IMG/VR virus record: IMGVR_UViG_3300045972_000138
Coordinates: 62,001-126,000 of that record
DNA: 64,000 bases
Strand: one strand, 5' to 3'
A program made the translations under genes and the position numbers. Shown piece after piece: positions 41,687 to 45,577 of this stretch (position 1 is the stretch's first letter; the number at the start of each line of letters is the position of its first letter). Below the pieces are notes generated by a model, which did not search any database, was not told the DNA's origin, and saw only the letters and a list, made by a program, of their open reading frames with translations.

Positions 41687-42628
41687 ATGAAGCAACTCTG
41701 GACTGAAAAGTACAGGCCTAAGGGCATTGACGGTTATGTATTTAAAGATACAAAACAACGTAAGCAAATTGATCAGTGGATTACCCAAAAGGCATTACCG
41801 CATATGTTGTTATCGGGTGCGCCTGGAACAGGAAAGTCAACACTAATTAAAGTCCTACTACACGAACTTGGTATTGATCCATTTGACGTGTTAGAAGTAA
41901 ATGCATCAAGGGATAACGGTGTCGACTTTATTCGCGACACTGTTACTAAGTTTTCGGAAACTATGGGTGTAGGCGATATGCGCTATATCTTCTTAGACGA
42001 AGCAGACGGGTTGTCCCCTGCAGCACAAGGAGTATTGCGCGGGACGATGGAAAAATACGCGAATTCCGTGCGATTTTTGCTCACTTGCAACTACCCGCAC
42101 AAAGTTATACCTGCTATTAAGTCACGCTGCGAAACCGGCAGAATGCACATCGAAAAGCTAGATACTAGCGAATTCTATATGCGTTTAATTGATATCTTAA
42201 CCAAAGAAAGTGTAGAGATTGATGCGGATGCATTAGAATCTATTGTTGGTTCAACATATCCGGATTTACGCAGAGGGATTAGCATGATCCAAGCTAATTC
42301 GTTTGGTGGCAAGTTATCATTGCCTGACGAAGGAAGTGAAGTAGTAGCAGACTATAAGATTGATATGGTCGCACTTTTTAGATCTAAAAAGTATACTGAG
42401 GCTAGAAAGCTAATTTGCACACAAGTACAACAAGACGAGTATGAAGACATATTCCGCTTTATGTATCAGAATTTAGAAATCTGGGCAGATGGTGATCAGA
42501 ATAAAGAAGACCAGGCAATTATTGTTATCAGGGACGGCCTTGTTAATGATAACCAATGCTCTGATAGAGAAATAAATCTCAGTGCGACATTTGTAGAATT
42601 AGAACAAGTAGCGAAAGGTATTAATTAA
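41687..42628 (+). CDS. Sliding clamp loader AAA+ subunit (RFC/T4 gp44-like)
   Basis: LWTEKYRP, GAPGTGKS, NASRDNG, LDEAD, LRGTME, SRC motif, DLRR. Confidence 0.92.
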   Translation: MKQLWTEKYRPKGIDGYVFKDTKQRKQIDQWITQKALPHMLLSGAPGTGKSTLIKVLLHELGIDPFDVLEVNASRDNGVDFIRDTVTKFSETMGVGDMRYIFLDEADGLSPAAQGVLRGTMEKYANSVRFLLTCNYPHKVIPAIKSRCETGRMHIEKLDTSEFYMRLIDILTKESVEIDADALESIVGSTYPDLRRGISMIQANSFGGKLSLPDEGSEVVADYKIDMVALFRSKKYTEARKLICTQVQQDEYEDIFRFMYQNLEIWADGDQNKEDQAIIVIRDGLVNDNQCSDREINLSATFVELEQVAKGIN

Positions 42629-43015: not shown

Positions 43016-43599
43016 AAAAATTAAAGAACATTATCCTATCAGACGCCGATGGCGTCTTGTTAGATTGGGAATGGGCATTTAGTGTATGGATGCAACAGCG
43101 CGGATTTACACACGCCGAAGGCCATAAGAAGACCTATATGTTGCATCATCACTACAACGACCTAACGCCAGGCGAAGCAAAACGCTCCATTAAACTATTC
43201 AACGAATCTGCTGCAATTGGTTTCTTACCTGCATTGCGCGATAGTATGTTTTATGTTAAGCGCCTGTACGAAGAACATGGATACAGAATTCGTGTTATCA
43301 CTAGTTTGTCGCTAGATGAAAATGCCGGTAAGTTACGCGAAATGAACTTACATAAGTTATTCGGCGATGCTATCGAAAAAGTTATCTGTCTTGAAACAGG
43401 TGCAGACAAAGATGAAGCACTAGCACCGTATAAAAACACAGGAATGTGGTGGATAGAAGACAAGCCAGAAAACGCCGATGCAGGACATAATATAGGGTTA
43501 AATAGTATATTAGTTGAGCACGGTCATAACATGGATCACGAAGCATCGTATCCAATTGTTAAGAACTGGAAAGAAATCTACGATATTATAACAAAATGA
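43012..43599 (+). CDS. HAD-superfamily 5'(3')-deoxyribonucleotidase-like
   Basis: DADGVLLDW, VITS, WIEDKPENA. Confidence 0.8.
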   Translation: MKKLKNIILSDADGVLLDWEWAFSVWMQQRGFTHAEGHKKTYMLHHHYNDLTPGEAKRSIKLFNESAAIGFLPALRDSMFYVKRLYEEHGYRIRVITSLSLDENAGKLREMNLHKLFGDAIEKVICLETGADKDEALAPYKNTGMWWIEDKPENADAGHNIGLNSILVEHGHNMDHEASYPIVKNWKEIYDIITK

Positions 43600-44222
43600 C
43601 AAAACGGATACTTGTATTAGGATTACCCGGGTCGGGCAAAACAACGTTCAGTCAAGAATTAGTCAAACGGCTAATGCTTAAACACACGATTGCGTGGTAT
43701 AATGCTGATGCTGTACGCAAAGAACACGATGATTGGGATTTCAGTCCCGAAGGTCGGATGCGTCAAGTTAAACGTATGCGCGATATGGCTGATTCTGCAG
43801 GTACCGATTTTGCTATATGCGACTTTGTATGCCCTACCGATGAATACAGAGCAGTGTTTGATGCAGATATAACAATCTGGATGAATACAATCGAAGAGGG
43901 TCGGTTTGCAGATACAAATAAAGCATTTGTACCACCTACTAAATTTGATTATGCTGTAACAAAGTGGGCGTATAACGATATTGTACTTACCGCGGTAATA
44001 AAAGATCACAGTTTCAGTAAAAAAGAATCGCATTTACGAAGCATCGTAAAAGCATTAAGCTGGCGTGTGTGTGGTACACTAGATACAATTGTTATAAGTT
44101 TCTTTATAACAGGTCAAATTCATACTGCTATCGCAATTGGTGGTTTAGAAGTTATTACCAAGATTGCGTGGTATTGGTTGCACGAGCGACTTTGGCAAAA
44201 AATTAAATGGGGCACTAAGTAG
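43596..44222 (+). CDS. APS-kinase-like P-loop kinase fused to DUF2061 membrane domain
   Basis: GLPGSGKTT, NADAVR, DWDFSPEGRMRQ, DFVCP; C-terminal RSIVKALSWRVCG...WLHERLW. Confidence 0.75.
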   Translation: MTKRILVLGLPGSGKTTFSQELVKRLMLKHTIAWYNADAVRKEHDDWDFSPEGRMRQVKRMRDMADSAGTDFAICDFVCPTDEYRAVFDADITIWMNTIEEGRFADTNKAFVPPTKFDYAVTKWAYNDIVLTAVIKDHSFSKKESHLRSIVKALSWRVCGTLDTIVISFFITGQIHTAIAIGGLEVITKIAWYWLHERLWQKIKWGTK

Positions 44223-44239
44223 TCCTACAATAAGAAGAT

Positions 44240-44690
44240 AAAGGTTGGTGCGCCAAGTTAATATTGCACTGAGACAAACTGCCTGATAGCAGTCAATACT
44301 CAAGCCGGCTAAAAAGTCGGTAATCCTGTGAGCTTCCATGGGGCCTGATGTTCCCGGTAGACATATTACCGATAAATCGTGCATTCTAGAATCTAGAAAA
44401 GACGTAGCATCATAAAAAATTATTAAGTTGCTGTCGGTAAGTGAATGTAAGGTATGCCCGACAGGCTGCGCTATAAGTGGTTGAAGACGAGTAGCATTAT
44501 GCAGTGACCGTAAAGAAGGCCCTACTATGACATCCGCAAGGATACAGTTGACATAATCAATCCGACACTGTTTAAAGTTATATTTCATCCTATATTGACG
44601 CTGTCAGTAAAAGTATGTGTTTAAATTCTGAGTCCCGAAACTCAGGTGTTAAACACATACCCTTTCTATATCTCTACCGTCAGTCTATGA
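44240..44690 (+). ncRNA. Candidate large structured non-coding RNA (family unknown)
   Basis: ORF-poor ~600-nt gap, ~44% GC over 44281-44520, at least 8 local hairpins including a GCAA tetraloop, long-range 8-bp helix, 12-bp terminal stem. Confidence 0.45.
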
Positions 44691-44761
44691 TTCTAGTCAA
44701 AAATATTATCTCAACTTATATCGCATATTCTGACACAATTTTACTATATTCTCTTAGATCA

Positions 44762-44796
44762 TAAAAAAAGCTTACTTACATCTCTGCAAGTAAGCT
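44762..44796 (-). terminator. Intrinsic terminator for phoH
   Basis: AGCTTACTT / AAGTAAGCT stem; A7 on + strand is the U tract on - strand. Confidence 0.6.
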
Positions 44797-44830
44797 CTAC
44801 AATATCTCTAAGAGATATTACATACTCTCT

Positions 44831-45577
44831 TTAATCTTCTTCTCCATAGATCTCTAAGACATCTGCAACTAATGGATCACGTTCGATATGTTCTCTGCCA
44901 AATTTGCATACTTGCATAGAATCTTTGCGATATCCCACTAATCTCTCTAAGAAGTCTTTAAGACCATTCTGCGAGAATCCACGATCATGTTGCTTTAAGT
45001 CTCCGGTTAAAACCATAGAGCTATTCTCGCCGATACGTGTCAATAACATCTTCATCTGATCAGGTGTAGCATTCTGCATTTCATCAGCAATGATGTAAGC
45101 ATTCTTGAATGTACGACCGCGCATGAAGCCTAACGGTGCAATTTCAATTGTACCATCTTCTAGCATTCGTGCGGTTTCTTGTAATCCATAATATTCTTCG
45201 AATACGTCAAATATAGGGCGAGTCCACGGCTCCATTTTTTCATTCAAAGTGCCTGGCAAAAATCCGTGTTTTTCGTCAACACTTACTGCCGGGCGGGTTA
45301 AAATAATCTTCGTAACCTCTTGCGAGCGAAGGGCTTGTATAGCTCTTAATACAGCTAAAAGTGTCTTACCGGTACCTGCAGGTCCGACTGCGAATACCAT
45401 GCGTTTTTCCAATAGTGCTTCTACATACGTCTCCTGGGCCGTATTACGTGGAAGTAATTCTACTTTTTTGTGATGTCTATTACCTAATCTAACTACAATG
45501 TCAGCTTTTGGTGCAGTTTGATTATGTGGTGTGGAACGGACTGGCGATACTTTGGCCATTTTACGATTTTTGCTCAA
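44831..45577 (-). CDS. phoH: PhoH-family ATPase
   Basis: GPAGTGKT, LTRPAV, GFLPG, EIAPLGFMRGRTF, DEMQN, TRIGE, TGDLKQ; TTG start 7 nt after AAGGAG. Confidence 0.93.
   Translation of the reverse strand: MSKNRKMAKVSPVRSTPHNQTAPKADIVVRLGNRHHKKVELLPRNTAQETYVEALLEKRMVFAVGPAGTGKTLLAVLRAIQALRSQEVTKIILTRPAVSVDEKHGFLPGTLNEKMEPWTRPIFDVFEEYYGLQETARMLEDGTIEIAPLGFMRGRTFKNAYIIADEMQNATPDQMKMLLTRIGENSSMVLTGDLKQHDRGFSQNGLKDFLERLVGYRKDSMQVCKFGREHIERDPLVADVLEIYGEED

What the first reader, a model, noticed from the sequence alone, without database searches (positions are those of the whole stretch)
44225..44760. Candidate large structured ncRNA between the kinase-DUF2061 gene and phoH
Seen: this is by far the largest gap in an otherwise gap-free window. 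It is ~44% GC over 44281-44520, while other intergenic DNA here is visibly AT-richer. The + strand carries these stems: TTGG-tgcg-CCAA (44245-56); ACTGC-ctgata-GCAGT (44278-93); CCGGCT-aaaa-AGTCGG (44305-20); CGGTA-gacatat-TACCG (44355-71); CTGTCGG/CCGACAG (44431-64); ATCC-GCAA-GGAT GNRA tetraloop (44532-43); ACAG-TTGA-cataa-TCAA...CTGT (44544-71); and a 12-bp stem capped by CTGAGT/ACTCAG (44613-60). Long-range helices TGGGGCCT/AGGCCCTA (44339-46/44517-24) and TGCAC/GTGCA (44265-69/44379-83) enclose multi-way junctions. Hallmarks of tmRNA, RNase P and group I introns are absent. Inference: an undescribed phage RNA (ribozyme, scaffold or protein sponge), or alternatively a structured replication origin.
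Basis: partly seen in the sequence, partly recalled or inferred. Interest (0 to 1): 0.8.

Follow-up and report, generated by a model that had tools for sequence, protein, structure and literature searches.

The report
New large structured phage RNA gene
The 608-base gap holds a gene for a roughly 450-nucleotide, elaborately folded non-coding RNA of a previously undescribed family, carried only by relatives of a jumbo phage, which matters because large structured RNAs are rare and this one's function is unknown.

Summary
The finding is real and the main interpretation holds. Window 44240-44690 (+ strand) is a member of a conserved RNA family. I found about 100 copies in viral and metagenome contigs (59 distinct full-length, 49 below 96% identity) and none in 185,579 bacterial or archaeal genomes or in cultured phages. 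On a structure-blind alignment, 92% of cells in 94 predicted pairs form standard pairs. Compensatory changes occur at 59 pairs, and the covariation score is 0.418, against 0.175 when shuffled and at most 0.085 when slid. G-U pairs outnumber A-C pairs 534 to 91, which fixes the RNA strand as +. A closing helix joins the two ends, at least twelve helices radiate from it, and one loop-to-strand pseudoknot covaries. No ORF is conserved. Rfam 15 and ARAGORN give nothing, and there are no iterons. Two classes exist: class A (the window type, always beside phoH) and a shorter class B (beside an endolysin gene, with its own promoter-like block). Some contigs carry both, and many syntenic relatives carry neither, so it is an accessory gene. 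One local stem and both long-range helices are wrong. Function is unknown; the best guess is an autonomous, trans-acting folded RNA like ROOL or GOLLD. Expression is not shown.

The parts
44240..44665 (+). Core of the structured non-coding RNA (class A), from the 5' strand of closing helix P1 to its 3' strand
   Evidence: nhmmer homologs. Covariation on alignments A1 and A2. G-U 534 against A-C 91. MFE z -3.59. Nucleotide identity to relatives equals or exceeds that of flanking genes in two of three relatives.
44666..44690 (+). Conserved 3' tail ending in the near-invariant motif CCGTCAG. It forms a small hairpin in class B but pairs poorly in the window.
   Evidence: Conserved columns 567-587 of A2. 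Helix 19 varies on one side only.
44240..44247 (+). P1 5' strand (AAAGG-U-UG). It pairs with 44658-44665 and closes the whole RNA.
   Evidence: Helix 1: 91% of cells paired, mostly invariant or one-sided changes (A-U to G-U), so probable rather than proven. The two P1b pairs compete with the bottom of P11 in the window.
44248..44269 (+). P2 hairpin (GUGCG / UGCAC)
   Evidence: All 5 pairs show changes on both sides (helix 2).
44271..44301 (+). P3 hairpin.
   Evidence: 8 of 10 pairs show compensatory changes (helix 3).
44305..44320 (+). P3.1 hairpin (CCGGCU/AGUCGG), an insertion specific to class A
   Evidence: 12 of 13 class A members fold a hairpin here, each with a different stem sequence. 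Absent in class B.
44325..44342 (+). P4 hairpin (CCUGUG/CAUGGG)
   Evidence: Helices 5 and 6; class A consensus fold.
44346..44412 (+). P5 three-way-junction domain. It comprises P5 (44346-51/44407-12), P5.1 (44355-59/44367-71, conserved ACAUA-type loop) and P5.2 (44385-89/44393-97).
   Evidence: All 13 class A members fold the same three-way junction on their own with different sequences. The class B counterpart helix covaries at all 5 pairs.
44431..44464 (+). P6 hairpin (CUGUCGG/CCGACAG) with a near-invariant apical motif (GUAUGUGAA..GGUAUG)
   Evidence: Helix 8: 97.6% of cells paired, 7 of 11 pairs compensatory, and the top mutual-information pairs.
44465..44505 (+). P7 and P7.1 stacked hairpin, whose loop (UUGAAG in the window, CUGAAA as consensus) forms the pseudoknot
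   Evidence: Helices 10 and 11.
44482..44485 (+). 5' strand of the pseudoknot. The P7.1 loop pairs with 44584-44587 (consensus CUGAA with UUCAG).
   Evidence: Several different compensatory variants are seen: CUGAG/CUCAG, CUAUA/UAUAG, UUAUA/UAUAA, UUGAA/UUCAA, UUGGG/UUCCA. Mutual-information hits. 87.8% of cells paired, 0 of 500 shuffles reach the score.
44584..44587 (+). 3' strand of the pseudoknot, a single-stranded joiner after P9
44506..44520 (+). P8 short hairpin (G-CC / GG-C); class B has an extra hairpin inserted in its loop
Evidence: Helix 12: 4 of 5 pairs compensatory, and the highest mutual information in the alignment.
44526..44582 (+). P9 three-way domain. It comprises P9 (44526-30/44578-82), P9.1 (44532-35/44540-43) and P9.2/P9.3 (44544-52/44556-71), which carry the invariant sequence GACAUAAUCAAUCC.
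   Evidence: Helices 14 to 17. The 20-mer built on the invariant sequence retrieved nearly all family members.
44593..44606 (+). P10 small hairpin; weak in the window (alternative UGAC/GUCA, 44596-99/44603-06)
   Evidence: Helix 18 shows wobble-type one-sided changes only. Its 3' motif changes in concert with the 3' tail motif, which is unexplained.
44613..44660 (+). P11 long terminal hairpin (12-bp lower stem, internal loop, 6-bp upper stem). It is the expanded version of a 16-nt hairpin in class B.
   Evidence: All 13 class A members fold it with different sequences. It is not called a terminator on the + strand.
44226..44239 (+). Possible promoter remnant: a -10-like TACAAT (44226-31) and the class-A-conserved GAAGAT (44234-39) just before P1. 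This is inferred only.
   Evidence: Upstream alignment of 13 class A loci: only these roughly 15 nt are conserved. The simple promoter scan did not call it.
44691..44766 (.). AT-rich spacer (28% GC across 44691-44830), not part of the conserved RNA
44767..44798 (-). Intrinsic terminator of phoH: a 14-bp hairpin followed by a T-run on the minus strand
44145..44588 (-). Chance ORF of 147 aa; not a gene
   Evidence: No Pfam hit. No ORF of 60 aa or more in the homologous region of L059 or L086. The longest stop-free stretch in 49 homologs ranges from 49 to 122 aa, with the window's at the top of that range. Indels are not multiples of three.

Best explanation
The gap encodes a stand-alone gene for a roughly 450-nt non-coding RNA on the + strand (about 44240-44690). 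It belongs to a previously undescribed family found only in contigs of phages related to Pseudomonas jumbo phage PA5oct, from fresh water, sediment, soil and wastewater.

The RNA is closed by a helix between its two ends (P1). From that helix radiate at least twelve helices arranged in hairpins and two three-way-junction domains. They are tied together by at least one loop-to-single-strand pseudoknot and carry several invariant loop and junction sequences.

I think it most likely works as an autonomous, stably folded, trans-acting RNA. It would be a scaffold, RNA-protein particle or RNA-only assembly, in the manner of the phage-borne 'ornate' RNAs ROOL and GOLLD. It behaves as an accessory gene that individual phages gain and lose.

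Shown: conservation, covariation, strand, absence of coding, independence from any one neighbouring gene, and patchy presence.
Inferred: that it is expressed as a discrete stable RNA, its exact ends, that it acts in trans, and what it binds.
For: Homologs:
- 9 distinct class A loci were found via phoH flanks.
- The invariant 20-mer retrieved 45 viral and 89 metagenome stretches, most of which nhmmer confirmed as homologs.
- These gave 59 distinct full-length copies, 49 of them below 96% identity.

Structure:
- On A1, 45 of 55 consensus pairs are compensatory.
- On A2, 94 pairs are 92.3% paired (79.3% shuffled, 33-45% slid). 59 pairs change on both sides. The covariation score is 0.418, against 0.175 shuffled and 0.056-0.085 slid, with 0 of 500 shuffles reaching it.
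- The pseudoknot covaries.
- Every class A member folds P3.1, the P5 domain and P11 on its own with different sequences.
- MFE z is -3.59.

Strand: G-U 534 against A-C 91.

Selection: RNA nucleotide identity to three relatives is 80, 78 and 68%. Neighbouring genes range from 64 to 80%.

Autonomy:
- Class A sits after variable genes next to phoH. Class B sits after an endolysin gene, convergent with baseplate genes, and has its own TAAAAT promoter-like block and 5' hairpin.
- Some contigs hold both classes, one class, or neither.
- PA5oct has the same synteny but only an 82-bp gap.

Not a known family.
Against: - No direct evidence of a discrete transcript. The only RNA-library signal is one 202-nt contig of a relative in a fish-gut metatranscriptome. 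It spans the upstream gene's end and the first 90 nt of the RNA (only that run). That fits read-through or DNA carry-over as well as it fits an RNA gene.
- No clear promoter or terminator for the class A RNA was found.
- P1 and the 3' hairpins show only one-sided changes.
- The alignment is MAFFT-based, and related sequences inflate the shuffle controls.
- Nothing tested here says what the RNA binds or does. The analogy with ROOL and GOLLD rests on size, ornateness and phage carriage only.
Confidence: 0.6

Rival explanations
1. The RNA is the partner (substrate, cofactor or regulator) of the adjacent phage PhoH ATPase, forming or feeding an RNA-protein machine. This overlaps with the best explanation but names the partner.
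For: In loci retrieved by the RNA's own 20-mer, and so not selected for phoH, 21 of 28 class-A-like loci have phoH 50-620 nt from the RNA. The rest are cut at that side or misclassified. A preprint of October 2026 reports long structured candidate RNAs recurrently next to bacterial PhoH2 (PIN plus PhoH) genes, with lineage-specific architectures on either side of the gene (bioRxiv 10.64898/2026.10.21.760802). From established knowledge, PhoH-family proteins are RNA-helicase-like ATPases.
Against: - Class B is never near phoH: 0 of 73 loci. Its neighbours are an endolysin gene and a baseplate gene.
- Many close relatives keep phoH but lack the RNA, as does PA5oct.
- The RNA and phoH are convergent, with phoH's own terminator between them.
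- In the NCBI MAG contig a 298-aa gene separates them.
- The class A linkage can be inherited synteny.
- The phage protein has no PIN domain.
- Homology to the PhoH2-associated RNAs could not be tested.
Confidence: 0.2
2. It is a ribozyme: a self-processing RNA or one that catalyses another reaction.
For: It is large, and a pseudoknot ties together a compact multi-junction architecture. Invariant nucleotides concentrate in internal loops and joiners rather than in helices. Conserved sequence lies immediately 5' of P1 in each class, which could mark a processing site.
Against: There is no match to any ribozyme family in Rfam, even at E up to 10. It is not inside a gene, so it is not an intron. 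It is not linked to a mobile element or to reverse transcriptase or endonuclease genes. No assay was possible.
Confidence: 0.1
3. It is a cis-acting part of an mRNA. It could be a 3'-UTR stabiliser or insulator at the end of the clamp-loader operon, or a giant leader for the small genes that follow it in some relatives.
For: In the window it begins 18 nt after the stop codon of the upstream gene. A metatranscriptome contig crosses that boundary. In L071, L067 and L073, same-strand ORFs of about 108 and 69 aa follow it.
Against: The upstream gene differs between class A loci, and the downstream gene is present or absent. Class B lies in an unrelated context with its own promoter-like block. Relatives with the same genes do without it. 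About 450 nt with a pseudoknot and invariant loops is far more than stabilisers or terminators need.
Confidence: 0.07
4. It is a structured DNA element, such as a replication origin or packaging site, rather than an RNA.
For: It is a large non-coding region next to replication genes, with many inverted repeats.
Against: The pairing is strand-specific. G-U pairs outnumber A-C pairs about six to one, which selection on duplex DNA or symmetric cruciforms would not give. There are no iterons or tandem repeats in 44150-44900. The region is not AT-rich. It is dispensable in close relatives.
Confidence: 0.02
5. The minus-strand ORF 44145-44588 (147 aa) is a real protein gene, and the conservation is coding conservation.
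For: An ATG-initiated ORF of 147 aa exists.
Against: It is not conserved. Homologous regions in L059 and L086 have no ORF of 60 aa or more, and stop-free stretches range from 49 to 122 aa. Indels are of all lengths. There is no Pfam hit. It overlaps the kinase gene's 3' end by 78 nt. Substitutions follow base-pair partners, not codon positions.
Confidence: 0.01

Closest known systems
ROOL RNA (Rfam RF03087)
   Same: A large (hundreds of nt), ornate, pseudoknotted non-coding RNA of unknown function. It is carried by phages and prophages as an accessory gene, and no protein partner is known (PMC12286853).
   Different: No sequence or structure match in cmscan, even at E up to 10. ROOL is usually near tRNA islands, whereas the window has no tRNA in 64 kb. 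ROOL is about 580 nt and assembles into an RNA-only cage. Assembly was not testable here, and no conserved self-complementary loop was seen.
GOLLD RNA (Rfam RF01998)
   Same: Phage-borne, very large and elaborately structured. It has a universally conserved part plus a variable or optional 5' part, which recalls the optional 5' module of class B. Function unknown.
   Different: No cmscan match. GOLLD often exceeds 800 nt, lies near tRNAs and forms a 14-mer cage. The present RNA is 375-475 nt (up to about 620 nt with the class B leader) and occurs in a different phage lineage.
PhoH2-associated structured RNA candidates (COMPASS cluster 1,412,455 and others; bioRxiv 10.64898/2026.10.21.760802)
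   Same: Long (357-nt motif), multi-stem RNAs with covariation and no Rfam annotation, lying directly beside a PhoH-family gene. The architectures differ between PhoH lineages.
   Different: Those RNAs are bacterial, and their partner carries a PIN nuclease domain, while the phage PhoH has none. Class B of the present family is not next to phoH.
PA5oct ncRNA001-004 (RNA-seq-defined 'lncRNAs' of the closest cultured relative; PMC7318152)
   Same: Non-coding transcripts of 236-619 nt in a jumbo phage of the same broad lineage. ncRNA002 is 451 nt and abundant.
   Different: They lie at other genome positions, and nhmmer with maximal sensitivity finds no similarity. PA5oct has only 82 bp at the syntenic site. 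No structure or conservation has been reported for them.
Bacterial RNase P RNA and tmRNA (large RNAs closed by a 5'-3' terminal helix)
   Same: Similar size, a closing helix between the two ends, and pseudoknots between hairpin loops and distant single strands.
   Different: No Rfam match. ARAGORN finds no tmRNA or tRNA-like domain. By inspection, which is my own knowledge rather than a tool result, the universally conserved P4 sequences of RNase P and the acceptor/T-arm of tmRNA are absent.

Membership tests
Any Rfam 15 family (including GOLLD, ROOL, OLE, HEARO, raiA, group I and II introns, RNase P, tmRNA, 6S, riboswitches) | Covariance-model score at or above the family's gathering threshold | tested here: not met
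   0 matches in the whole window and in 7 homolog loci. With permissive filters and E up to 10, only unrelated weak hits appeared (miRNA, snoRNA, CRISPR repeat), and they differ between homologs.
tmRNA / tRNA-like RNAs | tRNA-like acceptor/T-arm domain and tag reading frame | tested here: not met
   ARAGORN finds 0 genes in 64 kb.
ROOL / GOLLD type 'ornate large phage RNAs' (a functional kind, not a homology family) | More than 350 nt, extensive covariation-supported multi-helix structure with pseudoknots, non-coding | tested here: met
ROOL / GOLLD type 'ornate large phage RNAs' | Carried by phages or prophages as an accessory element | tested here: met
   All homologs lie in viral or metagenome contigs with phage genes. 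None is in the 185,579-species genome set. Presence among syntenic relatives is patchy.
ROOL / GOLLD type 'ornate large phage RNAs' | Location near tRNA islands | tested here: not met
   No tRNA in the window. The neighbours are replication and nucleotide-metabolism genes and phoH, or an endolysin gene and baseplate genes.
ROOL / GOLLD type 'ornate large phage RNAs' | RNA-only homo-oligomeric cage | not testable with these tools
   Needs native gels or cryo-EM.
PhoH2-associated structured RNAs (COMPASS preprint) | Recurrent adjacency to a PhoH-family gene | tested here: inconclusive
   Class A: 21 of 28 unbiased loci lie within 620 nt of phoH. Class B: 0 of 73. phoH-bearing relatives without the RNA are common.
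PhoH2-associated structured RNAs (COMPASS preprint) | Shared sequence or secondary structure with the published clusters | not testable with these tools
   The cluster sequences are not in the text.
Protein-coding gene | ORF conserved in frame across relatives | tested here: not met
Replication origin | Iterons or repeated binding sites, an AT-rich unwinding element, and strand-symmetric conservation | tested here: not met
   No direct or tandem repeats in the RNA. GC is above the intergenic mean. G-U 534 against A-C 91.
Intrinsic terminator (for hairpin 44613-44660) | GC-rich hairpin followed by a U-run on the transcribed strand | tested here: not met
   Not called on the + strand. The sequence that follows is CCCUUUCUAU, which is the conserved 3' strand of P1.

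The most novel reading that the evidence does not exclude
The RNA is the long-missing functional partner of phage PhoH. On this reading, class A RNA and the adjacent PhoH ATPase form an RNA-protein machine that acts on host or phage RNA during infection. It would be the phage counterpart of the structured RNAs just reported beside bacterial PhoH2 genes. That would give a concrete, testable handle on phoH, a widespread phage 'signature' gene whose role has never been established. An equally novel reading that is not excluded is a new large ribozyme or a self-assembling RNA-only particle.
Probability: 0.2. Interest if true: 0.88.

Novelty: new variant of a known kind. Interest (0 to 1): 0.8.

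Why it matters
Bacterial and phage RNAs longer than about 350 nt with dense, covariation-proven structure are very few. They include rRNAs, RNase P, tmRNA, group I and II introns, OLE, GOLLD, ROOL, HEARO and raiA. Each has turned out to be a ribozyme, a ribonucleoprotein core or an unexpected RNA-only assembly.

This is a further, unrelated family. It has about 100 natural variants, two structural classes, a covarying pseudoknot and invariant loops. That is enough comparative data to design probing, cryo-EM and binding experiments straight away.

It is confined to an environmental lineage of jumbo phages. Its presence or absence among otherwise syntenic genomes offers natural knock-outs. The tight linkage of class A to phoH, together with the new report of PhoH2-associated RNAs in bacteria, could make the long-standing question of what phage PhoH does directly testable.

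Tried and rejected
- Rfam at gathering and permissive thresholds on the window and on nine homolog regions: nothing consistent.
- ARAGORN: nothing.
- blastn of class A and class B against 50,697 GenBank phage records: no match.
- The kinase-DUF2061 protein as a handle for relatives: only 47-58% identical hits in unrelated contexts, none with the RNA.
- My first motif pattern was mis-registered and gave chance hits.
- Genome-contig scan: 27 chance hits in bacteria, none homologous.
- PA5oct: the syntenic site is empty, and its four RNA-seq ncRNAs are not related.
- RNA evidence: one read-laying run and two run searches gave only a boundary-crossing 202-nt contig of a relative, plus 67-nt fragments. 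This is inconclusive.
- I first noted that class B shared the HAD/phoH synteny because the ORF sizes were similar. Pfam showed the neighbours are an endolysin gene and a baseplate gene, so I withdrew that.
- PhoH protein search to reach PhoH2 loci: it returned only phage PhoH.
- Literature search for the invariant 14- and 16-mers and for phage large-RNA reports: no description of this RNA.
- ViennaRNA hard constraints in my script did not take effect, so no constrained fold is reported.
- A second pseudoknot (CCU 44521-23 with AGG 44644-46) and a P2-loop to P4-loop contact were considered. They are invariant or weakly supported.
Full report
**What is in the window.**
- A + strand operon ends at 44222. 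It comprises a clamp-loader large subunit (41687-42628), a 128-aa ORF, an NT5C/HAD-like 195-aa gene, and a 208-aa fusion of a P-loop kinase with DUF2061.
- phoH (282 aa, PhoH domain only) runs on the minus strand from 45679 to 44831. Its own hairpin-plus-T-run terminator lies at 44798-44767.
- The 608-nt gap between them is the largest in the window; the next is 293 nt.
- GC of 44281-44520 is 44.2%, against 33% for the other intergenic DNA.
- The window is part of IMG/VR contig 3300045972_000138 (238 kb, pond metagenome).
- The closest cultured relative by clamp loader is Pseudomonas jumbo phage PA5oct (Arenbergviridae), at 51% amino-acid identity.

**The gap is conserved without coding.**
- Loci fetched through the phoH protein showed nucleotide-level homologs of the gap in nine distinct contigs. 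One is 87% identical over 321 nt.
- None of these regions has a conserved ORF. L059 and L086 have no ORF of 60 aa or more there.
- Across 49 homologs the longest stop-free stretch ranges from 49 to 122 aa, with the window's minus-strand ORF at the top of that range.
- Indels are of all lengths, and the ORF has no Pfam hit.
- The RNA core is 80, 78 and 68% identical to three relatives. That matches or exceeds the flanking protein genes in two of them and falls within their range in the third; the genes span 64-80%.

**Size of the family.**
- An invariant 20-mer from the alignment retrieved 45 stretches from IMG/VR and 89 from JGI/ENA metagenomes. nhmmer confirmed most of them as homologs.
- The 27 exact matches in 185,579 bacterial and archaeal genomes are chance; none is a homolog.
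- GenBank phages have no match.
- One NCBI MAG contig of 284 kb carries the RNA.
- After removing duplicates there are 59 distinct full-length copies, 49 of them below 96% identity.
- They fall into class A (435-475 nt, the window type) and class B (375-400 nt core). Class A has extra hairpins P3.1, P5.1 and P5.2 and an expanded P11. Class B has an extra hairpin inside P8.

**Structure.**
- RNAalifold on MAFFT alignments, which use no structural information, gives a consistent model.
- On the 49-sequence alignment A2, 94 pairs in 19 helices are 92.3% paired. Column shuffles give 79.3% and slid partners give 33-45%.
- 59 pairs change on both sides. The covariation score is 0.418, against 0.175 shuffled (0 of 500 reach it) and 0.056-0.085 slid.
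- A mutual-information scan ranks the model's pairs at the top. It also exposed two additions.
- The first addition is the closing helix of the P5 domain.
- The second is a pseudoknot between the P7.1 loop and the joiner after P9, consensus CUGAA with UUCAG. It shows several different compensatory variants.
- Modules specific to class A align poorly, so I checked them sequence by sequence. All 13 members fold the P5 three-way junction, P5.1 and P11 on their own, and 12 of 13 fold P3.1, each with different stem sequences.
- With the right ends (44238-44691) the window RNA folds at -122.4 kcal/mol, z -3.59.
- G-U pairs (534) far outnumber A-C pairs (91), so the + strand is the RNA.

- Six of the eight local stems are confirmed.
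- In the seventh, the outer ACAG/CTGT helix covaries, but the inner TTGA/TCAA stem is invariant and so untestable.
- TTGG/CCAA conflicts with P1 and P2.
- The two long-range helices pair in only 55% and 38% of class A cells. They use segments whose covarying partners are local.

**Context and autonomy.**
- Class A always lies in the variable spot between the clamp-loader cluster and phoH. In loci found by the RNA's own motif, 21 of 28 have phoH within 50-620 nt.
- Class B is never near phoH, in 0 of 73 loci.
- Class B follows a GH108 endolysin gene and is convergent with a 191-aa gene and a T4-baseplate-family gene.
- Class B is preceded by its own conserved block: a TAAAAT -10-like box (often with TG), a small covarying 5' hairpin and, in most members, a further module of about 130 nt.
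- In class A, only about 15 nt upstream are conserved. These are a -10-like hexamer (TACAAT in the window) and GAAGAT.
- Two contigs of 369 and 385 kb hold one copy of each class. Others hold only A or only B.
- Many close, syntenic relatives have neither; small ORFs fill the site. PA5oct has an 82-bp gap.
- The RNA is therefore an accessory, self-contained gene.

**What it is not.**
- It matches no Rfam family at any threshold tried.
- It is not a tmRNA or tRNA.
- It has no iterons or tandem repeats.
- P11 is not a + strand terminator.
- It is unrelated to the four PA5oct ncRNAs.
- Full-text searches found no description of it.

**Expression.** This is the weak point.
- Only one RNA library holds related sequence. 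It is a 202-nt contig covering 44133-44330 that crosses from the upstream gene into the RNA.
- That is compatible with read-through, processing from a longer transcript, or DNA carry-over.
- The ends and the promoter of the class A RNA are unresolved.

**Mechanism.**
- The architecture is a P1-closed core with two three-way junctions, a pseudoknot, and invariant nucleotides concentrated in loops and joiners. That is typical of RNAs that act through a compact tertiary fold.
- Together with phage carriage, the accessory distribution and independence from any one neighbour, the closest analogues in kind are ROOL and GOLLD. I therefore favour an autonomous, trans-acting folded RNA (confidence 0.6 for the whole statement; about 0.95 that it is a genuine structured RNA family).
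- The most interesting specific alternative is a partnership with PhoH. It is prompted by the strict linkage of class A to phoH and by a preprint of October 2026 on PhoH2-associated structured RNAs in bacteria.
- Class B, the RNA-less phoH phages and the convergent arrangement argue against it as a general rule.
- A ribozyme, a cis-acting mRNA element, a DNA origin and a minus-strand protein are progressively less likely.

**Unexplained.**
- The YGUCA motif of P10 and the CCGUCA motif of the 3' tail change together to GGUG in one clade. This hints at two copies of one recognition site.

Noticed in passing
L201:3476-3700 (minus strand) and the other class B loci; not in the window: Class B RNAs are preceded by three conserved features. 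The first is a promoter-like block (TCAAGATT, a variable hairpin, then a TAAAAT box often with TG). The second is a small covarying hairpin. The third, in most members, is a module of about 130 nt whose stem CGGG/CCCG covaries and whose loop could pair downstream as an H-type pseudoknot. It has no Rfam match and may be a separate RNA domain or a second RNA.
   Followed up: partly
IMG/VR contigs 3300045971_000577 (L200 + L209) and 3300009709_000001 (L193 + L168): Two jumbo contigs (369 and 385 kb) each carry one class A and one class B copy at different loci. Contig 3300037466_002980 (363 kb) has class B plus a phoH locus without class A. I did not check whether these contigs are single genomes or chimeric assemblies.
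   Followed up: partly
window 44604-44607 and 44680-44683 (A2 columns 497-500 and 583-586): The two 3'-proximal GUCA motifs change in concert to the same letters (GGUG) in L192, L278, L261, L241 and L299. This is identity covariation, not base-pair covariation. It may mark a duplicated binding site or alternative pairing with one shared partner.
   Followed up: no
window 44241-44307: Contigs from two wastewater runs (X23, X24) match only this 67-nt stretch (P1 5' strand, P2 and P3) with a single mismatch and then diverge on both sides. The 5' domain is therefore nearly identical in another phage whose remaining RNA and flanks differ.
   Followed up: no
window 43596-44222: The gene upstream of the RNA fuses an APS-kinase-like P-loop kinase (residues 1-130) to a DUF2061 membrane domain (150-201). 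The phage homologs in GenBank (Xylella, Stenotrophomonas and Xanthomonas phages) match only the kinase part. The full fusion recurs at 47-49% identity in several viral contigs.
   Followed up: partly
window 44767-44798 and 44804-44862: phoH ends in a clean 14-bp hairpin terminator on the minus strand. A 13-nt near-palindromic motif ATCTCTAAGAGAT occurs twice, 46 nt apart, straddling the phoH stop codon (44804-16 and 44850-62).
   Followed up: no
L332 (NCBI GCA_050655915.1, contig JBMFGH010000751.1) 1-3800: In this 284-kb relative, the genes on the other side of phoH include a ClpA/ClpB-like AAA protein, a DnaJ-like protein and a 71-aa eIF-1A/IF1-fold protein (precomputed Pfam). PA5oct annotates similar chaperone genes there. 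I did not examine the window's ORFs beyond 47145.
   Followed up: no
class B loci, about 60-100 nt 3' of the RNA (A1 columns 700-745): A conserved motif (ACGAAGCGGAGTTTACGAAGCGAG) follows class B RNAs. It coincides with the 3' end of the convergent 191-aa gene, so it is probably C-terminal coding sequence on the other strand and not part of the RNA.
   Followed up: partly
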